A DNA stretch of 64,000 nt from contig CATNEN010000041.1 in the NCBI GenBank assembly GCA_950097015.1, positions 3,286,001-3,350,000 of the forward strand, written 5' to 3'. Source of the DNA: Macrostomum hystrix (taxonomy: Eukaryota > Animalia > Platyhelminthes). Under the pieces are notes generated by a model that saw nothing but the letters and a program-made list of their open reading frames with translations, was not told the DNA's origin and did not search any database. A program made the translations under genes and the position numbers. Shown one piece after another: positions 15,056-16,468 of the stretch; position 1 is the stretch's first letter, and every line of letters begins with the position of its first letter.

Positions 15056-16468
15056 ATGAACACCGACCTTCGACAGAAGATCAGGCGCAAGCGATCGGCT
15101 CAGAATGATGCTGAATCGTCAAGGCCTGGCATCAAGAAGGTTCGGCCTGACGAAAAACTGTTAACTGAACTGCGGCAGTGGCGCTTTGCCCGCTCTCTGG
15201 TCAAAGTGTTCTTGGGTGGCAATGGCGACATGTACCACAGCGAAGAGAAGAACCTTTCCGAGGCACAAAACATGCTGGACCGCTGGCTATTGTCTTTTCA
15301 GCTGGACTATGCAAAGAGCATGGACTCTCGCTATCCCCTGTTCCCTTGCAGCATGAGCATTGAGGACCCGGTGAACCAGAAGCTGATTGATGAGTGCATT
15401 GAGAAGAAGTTCAGCGCCGACAAAGAAGACGCCAAGAAAATCTTCCACAGGCTCAATAAGCGGCTGCACGAGTTCCTGGAAGACGACAGCAATGAGGACG
15501 GAAGTCGCATGACTGTCGAACTGATTGAGGACGATAACGATGCGGCCCACGTGACCCTCTCGGACTTCAAGTCCAGACATTGTTGGCGCGTCAAATTCCT
15601 AGTGCGCAACTTCGGCCTTCTGTCAGCCACGCGGATGCTGATCAGGTACGAGGCTCTGGGCACCGGCAGTCTGCAGTGGGGCGACCCCATCACTGTGCAC
15701 AATGCCCTTCACGACCTGATGGGGGTTCGCTACGAGGGTTTCGCCTCTCCACTCAATTCGAAAATGATCGACAAGGCAGACGCGCGCTTCTGCAGTCTCT
15801 TCTTCGACACAGACGAGGAGTTCGGCAGCATGGGCAGCTTCTTCAAAGTGGACTTTACCGAGTGCAACGGCGGCTGGACCGTCAACCCGCCCTTCATCGA
15901 AGAGCTCATGGACCGCGTGGCAACCAAGATTCTCAATTACCTGGACACTGGCGACGAGAAAAACTGGTTCTTCGTGACCTTCCCCAGGTGGGAGGACACT
16001 CCCGGCTGGGACCGGCTCAGCAGCTCCAAGCACCTCATCGACAAGATCGAGCTGGACAACGGCGGTTTCACCGTGCAGGACTGCTACGGCCGCATCTTCG
16101 TGCCGCGCAACAACCTCACCATCTTCGTGCTGGGCCACCGCCTGCCACCGGATGCGAACCTGCAAGGCATTCGCTCCATGTTTCGCAACCTGAACCGAGA
16201 CATTGTTGAAGCTGAGTGGCGCATGACCTGCAGCAAGCAGCTGCTCCTTGGAAACCAGCAGGAGACTGCAGTCTCTGCAGACCGCGTCTTCCTCAAGGGG
16301 ACCCGCCGAAAGGAGACTTCTGACAGCCTACCCGACGACTGCAGCGACGTCGATGATTGCGCGGAATCGACTCCCACTGTGCTGCCCGCCAAGCCTCTGA
16401 TTGACCCGAGCCTGAAACCCAACCGTCAGCTAAAGCGATTTGCCAAGGCTCATCAAGCCAATCAATAG
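15056..16468 (+). CDS. PCIF1: PCIF1/CAPAM-like cap adenosine N6-methyltransferase, single exon, no WW domain, 470 aa
   Basis: LDRWLL..PLFP helical-domain motif; MLIRYEAL, EGFASPLNS, FCSLFFDTDEEFGSMGSFF; catalytic motif IV NPPF followed by IEELMD; FFVTFPRW. Family assignment is clear but orthology to canonical PCIF1 is not. Confidence 0.85.
   Translation: MNTDLRQKIRRKRSAQNDAESSRPGIKKVRPDEKLLTELRQWRFARSLVKVFLGGNGDMYHSEEKNLSEAQNMLDRWLLSFQLDYAKSMDSRYPLFPCSMSIEDPVNQKLIDECIEKKFSADKEDAKKIFHRLNKRLHEFLEDDSNEDGSRMTVELIEDDNDAAHVTLSDFKSRHCWRVKFLVRNFGLLSATRMLIRYEALGTGSLQWGDPITVHNALHDLMGVRYEGFASPLNSKMIDKADARFCSLFFDTDEEFGSMGSFFKVDFTECNGGWTVNPPFIEELMDRVATKILNYLDTGDEKNWFFVTFPRWEDTPGWDRLSSSKHLIDKIELDNGGFTVQDCYGRIFVPRNNLTIFVLGHRLPPDANLQGIRSMFRNLNRDIVEAEWRMTCSKQLLLGNQQETAVSADRVFLKGTRRKETSDSLPDDCSDVDDCAESTPTVLPAKPLIDPSLKPNRQLKRFAKAHQANQ

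What the first reader, a model, noticed from the sequence alone, without database searches (positions are those of the whole stretch)
15056..16468. Intronless, WW-less PCIF1/CAPAM-like m6Am cap methyltransferase with non-metazoan-looking motifs
Seen: intact NPPF catalytic motif and CAPAM core, no WW domain in the ORF or nearby upstream frames, no introns while most neighbouring genes are spliced, a basic NLS-like N-terminus, SLQW where vertebrate PCIF1 has GLQG, and an insertion (KMIDKADAR) after FASPLNS. Known: animal PCIF1 uses its WW domain to bind the Pol II pSer5-CTD. Inference from recalled family patterns: this resembles protist/giant-virus homologues. It could be a horizontally acquired or retroposed paralogue acting independently of the CTD, for example on spliced-leader or TMG-capped RNA.
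Basis: partly seen in the sequence, partly recalled or inferred. Interest (0 to 1): 0.7.

Follow-up and report, generated by a model that had tools for sequence, protein, structure and literature searches.

The report
WW-less PCIF1-like cap methyltransferase paralogue
This is a real, expressed, intron-free flatworm gene for a compact PCIF1/CAPAM-type RNA-cap adenosine methyltransferase that lacks the RNA-polymerase-binding WW domain; it is one of six such extra copies beside the normal PCIF1 gene, and its closest relatives outside Macrostomum flatworms are giant-virus genes.

Summary
Window 15056-16468 (+) is an intact 470-aa ORF with a PCIF1 methyltransferase core (Pfam PF12237, E 7.6e-31), an NPPF motif, no WW domain, and the 5-residue insertion after FASPLNS. 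The AlphaFold model matches human CAPAM over both the helical and methyltransferase domains (Z 26.7).

Contigs that look like transcripts in two public runs cover 14952-16902 colinearly, with no splice and no upstream exon.

The same genome holds a canonical multi-exon WW-PCIF1 (contig C3) and five more short paralogues. The Macrostomum lignano orthologue (74-84% identical) lies next to ferrochelatase, as here, and dN/dS is about 0.19. So this is a conserved resident flatworm gene, not contamination.

Outside Macrostomum, the nearest relatives are a large WW-less family. All six metagenomic contexts I sampled, and 37 IMG/VR contigs, look like giant viruses. Some of those proteins are fused to FtsJ or XRN.

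The tree separates this family from canonical PCIF1 (100/100). The root and the donor are unresolved, so horizontal transfer is plausible but not shown.

The likely function is cap-adjacent m6Am methylation without tethering to the polymerase CTD. I file it as a new member of a known kind, of moderate interest.

The parts
14952..15055 (+). 5' UTR. The transcript contigs begin at 14952 (X5), 14970 (X6) and 14974 (X1, X3). It contains an in-frame TAG at 15029-15031 and no ATG.
15056..16468 (+). Complete intronless CDS of 470 aa plus TAG: a WW-less PCIF1/CAPAM-like methyltransferase.
   Evidence: dN/dS 0.19 against the M. lignano orthologue
15077..15145 (+). Basic N-terminal clusters KIRRKR (residues 8-13) and KKVR (residues 27-30). 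They look like an NLS, which is an inference. The first is partly conserved in M. lignano (KLKRRH).
   Evidence: model pLDDT about 60 here
15149..15580 (+). Compact helical domain (residues about 32-175), aligned in 3D with the CAPAM helical domain.
   Evidence: VIA-align places model 32-377 on human CAPAM 196-668 with Z 26.7; pLDDT mostly above 90
15581..16186 (+). Rossmann-fold methyltransferase domain (residues about 176-377).
15668..15679 (+). SLQW (residues 205-208). W208 is nearly invariant in the short family ('QQWG'); vertebrates have GLQG here.
15740..15790 (+). FASPLNS-KMIDKADAR-F (residues 229-245), with a 5-residue insertion relative to vertebrate CAPAM. This is the hallmark of the WW-less family.
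15884..15895 (+). NPPF catalytic motif (residues 277-280).
   Evidence: the catalytic role in CAPAM is described in PMC8287941
15983..15997 (+). PRWED (residues 310-314). W312 is invariant in 50 family members and aligns with the W of human 'PEWR'. It is a candidate substrate- or cap-contacting Trp, which is an inference.
16379..16441 (+). C-terminal motif VLPAKPLIDPSLKPNRQLKRF (residues 442-462), conserved in the M. lignano orthologue within an otherwise disordered, divergent tail.
16469..16902 (+). 3' UTR. The transcript contigs of X5 and X6 both end at 16902.

Best explanation
The ORF is a functional, expressed, single-exon nuclear gene of a macrostomid flatworm (a Macrostomum species other than M. 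lignano, inferred from orthologue identity and synteny). It encodes a compact PCIF1/CAPAM-type SAM-dependent N6-adenosine methyltransferase. The protein keeps the two-domain catalytic core (helical domain plus Rossmann methyltransferase domain with NPPF) but has no WW domain, so it cannot dock on the Ser5-phosphorylated Pol II CTD the way canonical PCIF1 does. It belongs to the large WW-less 'short' PCIF1-like family that is typical of giant viruses (NCLDV) and protists. In this genome it is one of six short paralogues, alongside one canonical WW-PCIF1. The most likely activity is N6-methylation of the cap-adjacent (2'-O-methyl)adenosine of m7G-capped RNA, giving m6Am. It would find capped RNA by diffusion, possibly in the nucleus via its basic termini, and not co-transcriptionally. 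Shown here: gene integrity, fold, catalytic motif, expression as an unspliced ~1.95-kb RNA, purifying selection, paralogy, synteny, and family placement. Inferred: the substrate, the localisation, and independence from the CTD.
For: Family and motif: PF12237 at E 7.6e-31; CAPAM chains are the only PDB sequence hits, with FASPLN, DTD..FGS and NPPF aligned. Fold: the AF2 model has pLDDT 84; VIA-align gives Z 26.7, 319 residues and rmsd 3.7 A to human CAPAM across the helical and methyltransferase domains, while the next unrelated entry scores Z 9.4. Expression and structure: contigs are colinear with 14952-16902 in X5 and X6, with 0 mismatches and no joints, and the flanks are uncovered. Conservation: the M. 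lignano orthologue PAA56815.1 (P0024) is 74% identical over the full length and 83-84% over the core, and lies directly downstream of ferrochelatase as in the window. dN/dS is 0.19 overall and 0.15 in the core. Host-like composition: GC3 is 0.75, equal to the neighbouring ferrochelatase. Paralogy: search of the genome found the canonical gene (two matches) and five further PF12237 loci besides this one, and the canonical gene has a WW exon. Function of the family: NCLDV members are fused to the FtsJ 2'-O-methyltransferase (P0033) or to the XRN 5'-3' exonuclease (P0107, P0022), which ties the family to mRNA 5' ends. A 2026 preprint reports that short (<480 aa) non-metazoan PCIF1-like enzymes methylate the cap-adjacent A of m7G-capped RNA in vitro (10.64898/2026.10.22.757692).
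Against: No enzymatic or cap-mapping data exist for this protein or for any Macrostomum PCIF1. I checked the cap-binding pocket only at the level of fold and a few conserved residues; I could not superpose the model on the m7G-bound structure. In the preprint screen only 10 of 55 short homologues were active, so family membership does not guarantee activity. Runs X5 and X6 are not on record as RNA; I infer that they are transcriptomes from the pattern of contigs. Three sister paralogues (the C1 loci) have GPPF, SPPF or NPPH in place of NPPF, which shows that the family is diversifying and may have other roles.
Confidence: 0.65

Rival explanations
1. Origin A: the short family entered a macrostomid (or earlier flatworm) ancestor by horizontal transfer from a giant virus or a protist. 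It then duplicated into three subclades and six genes, ameliorated to host codon usage, and gained introns in two paralogues. (Rivals 1-3 concern origin and are not exclusive of the functional explanation. Rival 3 can be combined with 1 or 2.)
For: Outside Macrostomum, the only members of the 16-sequence clade are three unlabelled environmental or transcript sequences, and no other named animal appears in the 150 best hits listed of 2390 representatives, or in two word searches. All six sampled relatives sit in NCLDV-like contigs. 37 IMG/VR loci, including GVMAGs, encode relatives. The careful tree puts the clade inside the short family, sister to an NCLDV-context group. Four of the six paralogues are intronless, and the introns of the other two are at non-shared positions, which fits an intronless ancestor.
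Against: The sister relation has only 75/90 support and the backbone is weak. The AU test does not reject canonical plus Macrostomum-short on one side of a branch (p 0.65). Short forms also occur in cellular eukaryotes (Chlorophyta and Oomycota clusters). The outgroup rows are fragments of 100-170 columns. The organisms behind P0025, P0026 and P0028 are unknown and could be other animals.
Confidence: 0.45
2. Origin B: the short genes are an ancient, vertically inherited eukaryotic paralogue, or the ancestral short form from which WW-PCIF1 derives. It was retained in macrostomids and lost in most other animals.
For: The AU test allows the canonical branch to attach at the Macrostomum clade; the constrained tree is 1.2 lnL units better. 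The family is old within Macrostomum, since all three subclades have M. lignano orthologues. Codon usage is fully host-like. Protist members exist.
Against: It requires many independent losses across Metazoa. No named animal other than M. lignano appears among the hits. The free careful tree nests the clade among NCLDV-context sequences.
Confidence: 0.3
3. Origin C: this particular copy (C41 type) is an old retrocopy of the intron-bearing sister paralogue (C39 type), made before the split from M. lignano.
For: C41 and C39 are sister paralogues (support 100/99). The C39 gene has at least two GT-AG introns in the region seen, at positions shared with M. lignano P0001, whose 440-aa product spans 4.5 kb. 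C41 has none.
Against: I saw no poly(A) remnant or target-site duplication by eye at 16902 onward. The three C1 paralogues are intronless too, and the C32 and C39 introns are at different positions, so intron gain from an intronless ancestor explains the pattern with fewer assumptions. After a divergence of dS about 1, any traces would be erased, so this cannot be tested decisively here.
Confidence: 0.25
4. Different substrate: the enzyme does not write m6Am on ordinary m7G caps. Instead it methylates another target, for example spliced-leader RNA or TMG-capped RNA, snRNA, internal RNA adenosines or DNA; or it is a non-catalytic RNA-binding protein.
For: A canonical PCIF1 is already present, so the six extra copies suggest sub- or neofunctionalisation. 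Motif variants occur in the C1 paralogues. Only a minority of short homologues were active on capped oligos in the preprint screen.
Against: This copy keeps NPPF, the DTD..FGS and FASPLN motifs and the whole helical-plus-methyltransferase architecture that confers cap specificity in CAPAM. The family's fusions are to cap and 5'-end enzymes. Nothing in the data links it to spliced-leader RNA.
Confidence: 0.2
5. Artefact: contamination from a virus or protist in the assembly, or a decaying pseudogene.
For: It is intronless and virus-like, and is flanked by a retroelement fragment and tandem repeats.
Against: It lies between spliced flatworm genes on a multi-megabase contig. Synteny with ferrochelatase is conserved in M. 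lignano. GC3 is host-like. The ORF is intact, with dN/dS 0.19. Transcript contigs exist in several runs.
Confidence: 0.02

Closest known systems
Human and zebrafish PCIF1/CAPAM (PDB 6IRV, 6IRW, 6IRX-6IS0)
   Same: The same two-domain catalytic core (helical domain plus Rossmann methyltransferase domain): Z 26.7 over 319 residues. NPPF, FASPLN, DTD..FGS and the P-x-W motif are all conserved.
   Different: It has no WW domain and no long linker. The core is about 130 residues shorter (346 against 473 residues spanned). Identity in the structural alignment is only 22-24%. It has a 5-residue insertion after FASPLNS, and SLQW in place of GLQG. In the tree it is separated from canonical PCIF1 by a 100/100 branch.
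WW-less PCIF1-like proteins of giant viruses (e.g. Bodo saltans virus A0A2H4UTM5, CroV E3T4I2, Hokovirus A0A1V0SFI2, Tetraselmis virus 1 A0A2P0VNQ5, Pithovirus LCPAC; many GVMAG and IMG/VR contigs)
   Same: Length, domain make-up, the FASPLNSxLxGxxxxxFCSLFxDTD signature and the QWG motif. By sequence, metagenomic relatives score 120-146 bits, against 69 bits for human CAPAM. The fold matches BFVD at E 1e-10 to 4e-17.
   Different: It is encoded in an animal chromosome with host codon usage, conserved synteny and paralogues that have spliceosomal introns. It forms its own clade (99/100) with at most 44% identity to any non-Macrostomum protein. It has lineage-specific basic N- and C-terminal extensions.
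[quoted passage not shown]
   Same: They are short (<480 aa) WW-less PCIF1 homologues with the catalytic motif. They were shown in vitro to be specific for m7G-capped RNA and to produce m6Am.
   Different: Their sequences and source organisms are not given in the text held here, so relatedness could not be measured. They are non-metazoan, and the present protein is untested.
Macrostomum lignano BOX15_Mlig000263g6 (PAA56815.1, P0024), an automatic annotation 'PCIF1 WW domain-containing protein'
   Same: It is the positional orthologue, lying downstream of ferrochelatase. It is 74% identical over the full length and 83-84% over the core, with the same motifs and the same C-terminal LPAKPxIDPxLKPNRQLKRF tail.
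   Different: In M. lignano the locus is three in-frame tandem units (model of 1283 aa). Units 1 and 2 are each interrupted by about 1.2-1.4 kb. Here there is a single uninterrupted unit.

Membership tests
PCIF1/CAPAM methyltransferase family (Pfam PF12237) | Significant match to the family profile, above the curated cut-off | tested here: met
   107.5 bits against a cut-off of 31.1, E 7.6e-31, residues 193-334
PCIF1/CAPAM methyltransferase family (Pfam PF12237) | Catalytic NPPF loop (motif IV of N6-adenine methyltransferases) | tested here: met
   NPPF at residues 277-280, aligned with the human and zebrafish NPPF; its role is described in PMC8287941
PCIF1/CAPAM methyltransferase family (Pfam PF12237) | CAPAM-specific helical domain packed against the Rossmann methyltransferase domain | tested here: met
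   On the predicted model: Z 26.7, 319 aligned residues, model 32-377 against chain 196-668 of 6IRV; the next unrelated fold scores Z 9.4
PCIF1/CAPAM methyltransferase family (Pfam PF12237) | m7G-cap pocket residues, including the cap-stacking Trp | tested here: inconclusive
   W312 (PRW) aligns with human PEW and is invariant in 50 relatives; W208 is nearly invariant. I could not superpose the model on the ligand-bound 6IRZ or 6IS0 structures.
PCIF1/CAPAM methyltransferase family (Pfam PF12237) | Cap-dependent N6-methylation of the first transcribed Am | not testable with these tools
   Needs an enzyme assay or cap mass spectrometry
Canonical metazoan WW-PCIF1 orthologue group | N-terminal WW domain that binds the pSer5 CTD | tested here: not met
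   No WW hit in the protein. No WW motif in upstream frames. The transcripts are unspliced, with an in-frame stop before the ATG.
Canonical metazoan WW-PCIF1 orthologue group | Groups with metazoan PCIF1 in a phylogeny | tested here: not met
   The canonical rows, including this genome's own C3 exon, form a 100/100 clade that excludes it. A sister position of the whole Macrostomum short clade is not rejected (AU p 0.65).
Canonical metazoan WW-PCIF1 orthologue group | It is the genome's single PCIF1 gene | tested here: not met
   A separate multi-exon WW-PCIF1 lies at C3:~9871150-9877869(-)
WW-less short PCIF1-like family (NCLDV/protist type) | Signature FASPLNSxLxGxxxxxFCSLFxDTD (a 5-residue insertion) and the QWG motif | tested here: met
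WW-less short PCIF1-like family (NCLDV/protist type) | Compact protein of helical plus methyltransferase domains, about 300-480 aa, without a WW domain | tested here: met
   470 aa, with the core at residues 32-377
WW-less short PCIF1-like family (NCLDV/protist type) | Clusters with family members rather than with canonical PCIF1 | tested here: met
   A 100/100 branch separates canonical from short. Bit scores are 120-146 to metagenomic members and 69 to human. Caveat: the root is unresolved.
Processed retrocopy | Intronless copy of an intron-bearing parent, with a poly(A) remnant and target-site duplications | tested here: inconclusive
   It is intronless, while its sister paralogue C39 has introns. 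No poly(A) tract or duplication was seen by eye after 16902; the age (dS about 1) would have erased them.

The most novel reading that the evidence does not exclude
A macrostomid flatworm ancestor captured a cap m6Am methyltransferase gene from a giant virus. The gene was domesticated and expanded to six paralogues in three subclades, one of them with altered catalytic motifs (GPPF, SPPF, NPPH). It now provides CTD-independent, possibly post-transcriptional or substrate-specialised, cap-adjacent adenosine methylation alongside the canonical PCIF1. That would be a rare case of virus-to-animal transfer of an mRNA-cap modification enzyme. In a trans-splicing animal, one or more copies could act on spliced-leader-derived 5' ends.
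Probability: 0.3. Interest if true: 0.65.

Novelty: new member of a known kind. Interest (0 to 1): 0.45.

Why it matters
PCIF1 is treated as the single m6Am writer of animals and as working co-transcriptionally through its WW domain. Here an experimentally tractable flatworm genus carries one canonical gene plus six WW-less copies of the giant-virus/protist type. These copies are conserved between two Macrostomum species, at least two of them appear to be expressed, and the one tested here is under purifying selection. This gives a natural system for three questions: what cap m6Am does when it is uncoupled from Pol II; whether PCIF1-like enzymes can diverge in substrate; and whether giant-virus mRNA-modification genes have been domesticated by animals. 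It does not change what kind of enzyme this is. The WW-less family is already visible in databases, and a recent preprint shows that some members are active on caps.

Tried and rejected
1. Word-index searches with the protein and with a 13-row profile of the clade found no named organism except M. lignano. They missed sequences found by the exhaustive search, so their blank is weak evidence.
2. Literature searches for PCIF1 with giant virus, Macrostomum, NCLDV or kinetoplastid terms found nothing relevant. A search for SRR21676451 found nothing.
3. The source organisms of P0025 (Logan SRR21676451), P0026 (IMG 3300078644) and P0028 (UniParc UPI000601E264) could not be identified. P0028 has no gene on record.
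4. FastTree suggested an XRN-fusion NCLDV group (P0107, P0089, P0076) as sister. The mixture-model IQ-TREE did not reproduce this, so I dropped it as a long-branch effect.
5. An AU test of 'canonical plus Macrostomum-short on one side of a branch' did not reject that arrangement. I therefore do not claim nesting inside viruses or a donor.
6. I found no evidence of SL trans-splicing of this mRNA. The contig 5' ends (14952, 14970, 14974) do not follow an AG, and no loose 5' letters were reported. Contigs cannot exclude it.
7. YN00 dN/dS failed numerically, so only NG86 is reported.
8. Following the operators' rule, the multi-exon genes (canonical C3, C39/L005, C32/L007) were searched and aligned exon by exon, by reference.
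Full report
OBSERVATION. Pfam gives one family, PF12237 (the PCIF1 methyltransferase core), at E 7.6e-31 and 107.5 bits against a cut-off of 31.1. There is no WW domain or any other domain at E<=0.1. The only solved structures hit by sequence are human and zebrafish CAPAM. In that alignment NPPF (residues 277-280), FASPLN and DTD..FGS are conserved. The query has SLQW where vertebrates have GLQG, and it carries a 5-residue insertion after FASPLNS.

FOLD. An AlphaFold2 model built on a 50-sequence alignment has mean pLDDT 84 and pTM 0.80. 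Only the first ~30 residues and residues ~400-455 are poorly defined. Foldseek ranks the six CAPAM entries first (E 6e-15 to 9e-12). VIA-align gives Z 26.7, 319 aligned residues and rmsd 3.7 A to human CAPAM 6IRV, with model residues 32-377 on chain residues 196-668. That span covers both the CAPAM-specific helical domain and the Rossmann domain. The next unrelated entry scores Z 9.4. The protein is therefore a condensed but complete CAPAM catalytic core. In CAPAM this core is what recognises the cap, while the WW domain plays no part in catalysis (review PMC8287941).

GENE STRUCTURE AND EXPRESSION. Laying public contigs on 12100-17100 shows, in runs X5 and X6, one contig each (1952 and 1933 nt) that is colinear with 14952/14970-16902. 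These have zero differences and no joints. No run covers 13603-14938.
- These runs hold only ~50 Mb of contigs for a 220-Mb genome, yet this contig has depth 50-72 and stops at the gene's ends. I read them as transcriptomes, although the record does not say RNA.
- Runs X1 and X3 hold shorter pieces that begin at 14974.
- The 5' leader has an in-frame TAG at 15029-15031 and no ATG, so 15056 is the first AUG.
- The upstream neighbour, ferrochelatase (Pfam E 2.5e-75), is split across frames, which means it is spliced.

THE REST OF THE GENOME. A six-frame search of the assembly (220 Mb, 42 contigs) with PF12237 finds eight matches at seven loci.
- One locus, on contig C3 (minus strand), is the canonical gene. 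It is multi-exon. Its first exon encodes a textbook WW domain (GWRKFWSKRENRPYYFNKLTNQSLWETPP), followed by helical-domain exons and a core exon with [23 protein letters not shown]...ANPPF, which lacks the insertion. That exon is 60-78% identical to PCIF1 fragments of a frog, a spider and many unnamed animals.
- The other six loci are short, WW-less genes: this one (C41); three intronless ORFs on C1 (358, 366 and 382 aa from the first Met); C39; and C32.
- C32 has one clean GT-AG intron. C39 has at least two, at positions shared with its M. lignano orthologue, whose 440-aa product spans 4.5 kb.
- The C1 copies have GPPF, NPPH or SPPF in place of NPPF.
- A 1273-nt contig in X5 and X6 matches the C1b paralogue exactly, so that copy appears to be expressed as well.

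ORTHOLOGY AND SELECTION. The exhaustive representative search returns M. lignano PAA56815.1 (P0024) as the top hit, at 77% identity. In M. lignano this gene lies immediately downstream of ferrochelatase, as in the window, so it is the positional orthologue. There the locus consists of three in-frame tandem units, two of which are interrupted by 1.2-1.4 kb. A codon alignment of the window ORF with the uninterrupted third unit gives 74% amino-acid identity, dN 0.19, dS ~1.0 and dN/dS 0.19 (0.15 in the core). dS is close to saturation. Besides the core, a C-terminal motif (LPAKPxIDPxLKPNRQLKRF) is conserved. GC3 of the ORF (0.75) equals that of ferrochelatase. Contamination and pseudogene readings are therefore excluded. 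The genome is a Macrostomum-like flatworm that is not M. lignano; this is an inference from these identities and the one-to-one pairs of paralogues.

THE WIDER FAMILY. The exhaustive search finds 2390 representative clusters at E<=1e-3 (864 at E<=1e-10). Essentially all of the 150 listed hits in which the FASPLN motif could be located carry the FASPLNSxLxGxxxxxFCSLFxDTD form, with NPPF or NPPY.
- Only Macrostomum proteins carry organism names.
- I looked at the genomic context of six unnamed relatives (P0016, P0004, P0076, P0107, P0030, P0033). All lie in densely packed, intron-free contigs. These contigs carry RNA-polymerase subunits, topoisomerase II, ankyrin arrays, a tRNA synthetase, RNase III, YqaJ, EsV-1-7 and DUF5757 genes, which is what giant viruses look like.
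- A scan of IMG/VR finds 37 loci, many on GVMAG contigs of up to 957 kb.
- BFVD fold matches are PCIF1-like proteins of Bodo saltans virus, CroV, Hokovirus, Tetraselmis virus 1, pithoviruses and salmon gill poxvirus.
- The ESM Atlas lists NCLDV, Chlorophyta and Oomycota clusters ahead of the chordate WW-PCIF1 cluster.
- Some viral members are fused to an FtsJ 2'-O-methyltransferase (P0033), an XRN 5'-3' exonuclease (P0107, P0022) or a GT8 domain (P0004). The first two fusions tie the family to mRNA 5' ends.

PHYLOGENY. I built an IQ-TREE (LG+C20 PMSF, UFBoot/SH-aLRT) of 84 rows: 16 clade members, 59 sampled relatives, and 9 canonical rows including this genome's C3 exon. Multi-exon genes entered as single exons only.
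- Canonical and short families are separated by a 100/100 branch.
- All Macrostomum short genes plus three unlabelled sequences (P0025, P0026, P0028) form one clade (99/100).
- The clade has three subclades, each with M. lignano orthologues: A (C41 and C39, NPPF), B (C32 plus the three unknowns, NPPF), and C (the three C1 genes, variant motifs).
- The clade's sister is a group of eight sequences, two of which I checked and found in NCLDV contexts, but support is only 75/90 and the backbone is weak.
- An AU test does not reject a tree in which the canonical branch attaches to the Macrostomum clade (p 0.65).
- What is settled: the gene is not a recent copy of the canonical PCIF1, and it belongs to the short family by sequence signature.
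- What is not settled: where the root lies, whether the clade is nested among viruses, and who the donor was.

HOW IT MOST LIKELY WORKS. The protein keeps the whole catalytic and cap-recognition module of CAPAM and has lost, or never had, the Pol II docking module. The best-supported reading is a SAM-dependent N6-methyltransferase for the cap-adjacent adenosine that reaches capped RNA without CTD tethering. The basic N-terminal clusters and the conserved basic C-terminal motif may serve nuclear import or RNA or partner binding; that is inference. The presence of a canonical PCIF1 and five more short copies, three of them with altered catalytic motifs, suggests a division of labour. Nothing here says what that division is.

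ORIGIN. Three readings remain.
- Horizontal transfer from a giant virus or protist into a macrostomid ancestor is my favoured one (~0.45). It is favoured by the taxonomic distribution, the viral neighbours in the tree and the mostly intronless state.
- An ancient vertically inherited paralogue (~0.3).
- For this copy specifically, an old retroposition from the intron-bearing C39-type sister (~0.25). This is compatible with either of the first two.

COMPARISON AND VERDICT. It works like CAPAM and is a member of the PF12237 family. It fails the membership tests for the canonical WW-PCIF1 orthologue group, and it meets those of the WW-less short family. That family is already visible in public annotation, and one preprint has shown activity for some members. 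The M. lignano copies exist in UniProt only as automatic annotations, and I found no paper that discusses them. I rate it a new member of a known kind, of moderate interest (0.45). The interest lies in an animal that carries a conserved, expressed, expanded set of giant-virus-type cap methyltransferases next to its canonical PCIF1.

Noticed in passing
L019 4001-10499 (M. lignano GCA_002269645.1, NIVC01002568.1): The M. lignano orthologue is three in-frame tandem PCIF1-like units annotated as one 1283-aa protein. Units 1 and 2 are each interrupted after 'FVTFPR' by ~1.2-1.4 kb (4943-6185 and 7422-8843). Only unit 3 is uninterrupted and carries the conserved C-terminal tail. It could be a real triple-domain gene or two disrupted copies plus one intact copy.
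   Followed up: partly
G000 C1:22256057 (L003), C1:6952137 (L004), C1:11559307 (L006): Three intronless short paralogues have GPPF, NPPH and SPPF in place of NPPF and have lost the QWG motif. M. lignano P0027 also has GPPF. They may be inactive or have a changed specificity. L004 has a 1273-nt contig in runs X5 and X6, so it appears to be expressed.
   Followed up: partly
L018 2273-4579; L016 10001-13714; L012 8001-10214: Giant-virus contigs encode PCIF1-like domains fused to an FtsJ 2'-O-methyltransferase (P0033), an XRN 5'-3' exonuclease (P0107; also P0022) and a GT8 glycosyltransferase (P0004). L012 also has a Methyltransf_15 (cap guanine-N2 / TGS-like) gene at 5785-6558.
   Followed up: partly
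L007 ~1740-2190; L010 (intron of the canonical PCIF1): The single intron of the C32 paralogue consists largely of a tRNA-like SINE-type repeat. A similar translated stretch occurs in an intron of the canonical C3 gene. It may be the abundant hammerhead/tRNA-box repeat that the scan noted at window 24908-25016.
   Followed up: no
L005 138-1427 and 1830-2090: The C39 paralogue is surrounded and interrupted by tandem arrays: a 74-bp unit repeated upstream of the core exon, and a ~33-bp unit inside the intron after 'YLDG'. Its N-terminal exons were not located within the 3.3-kb locus.
   Followed up: no
window 12700-13582: A fragment of a retroelement (the ORF at 12957-13520 on the minus strand has a zinc-binding tail like that of a non-LTR reverse transcriptase). 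Contigs of X3, X5 and X6 match it at only ~90-95% identity, so it is a multicopy, apparently transcribed family.
   Followed up: no
window 11615-12079 and 17143-18017: Tandem repeat arrays flank the ferrochelatase to PCIF1-like interval. They give long spurious ORFs in several frames.
   Followed up: no
window 9701-11015: The ferrochelatase gene (Pfam E 2.5e-75) is on the same strand and split across frames by at least one short intron near 10093-10119. Its adjacency to the PCIF1-like gene is conserved in M. lignano.
   Followed up: partly
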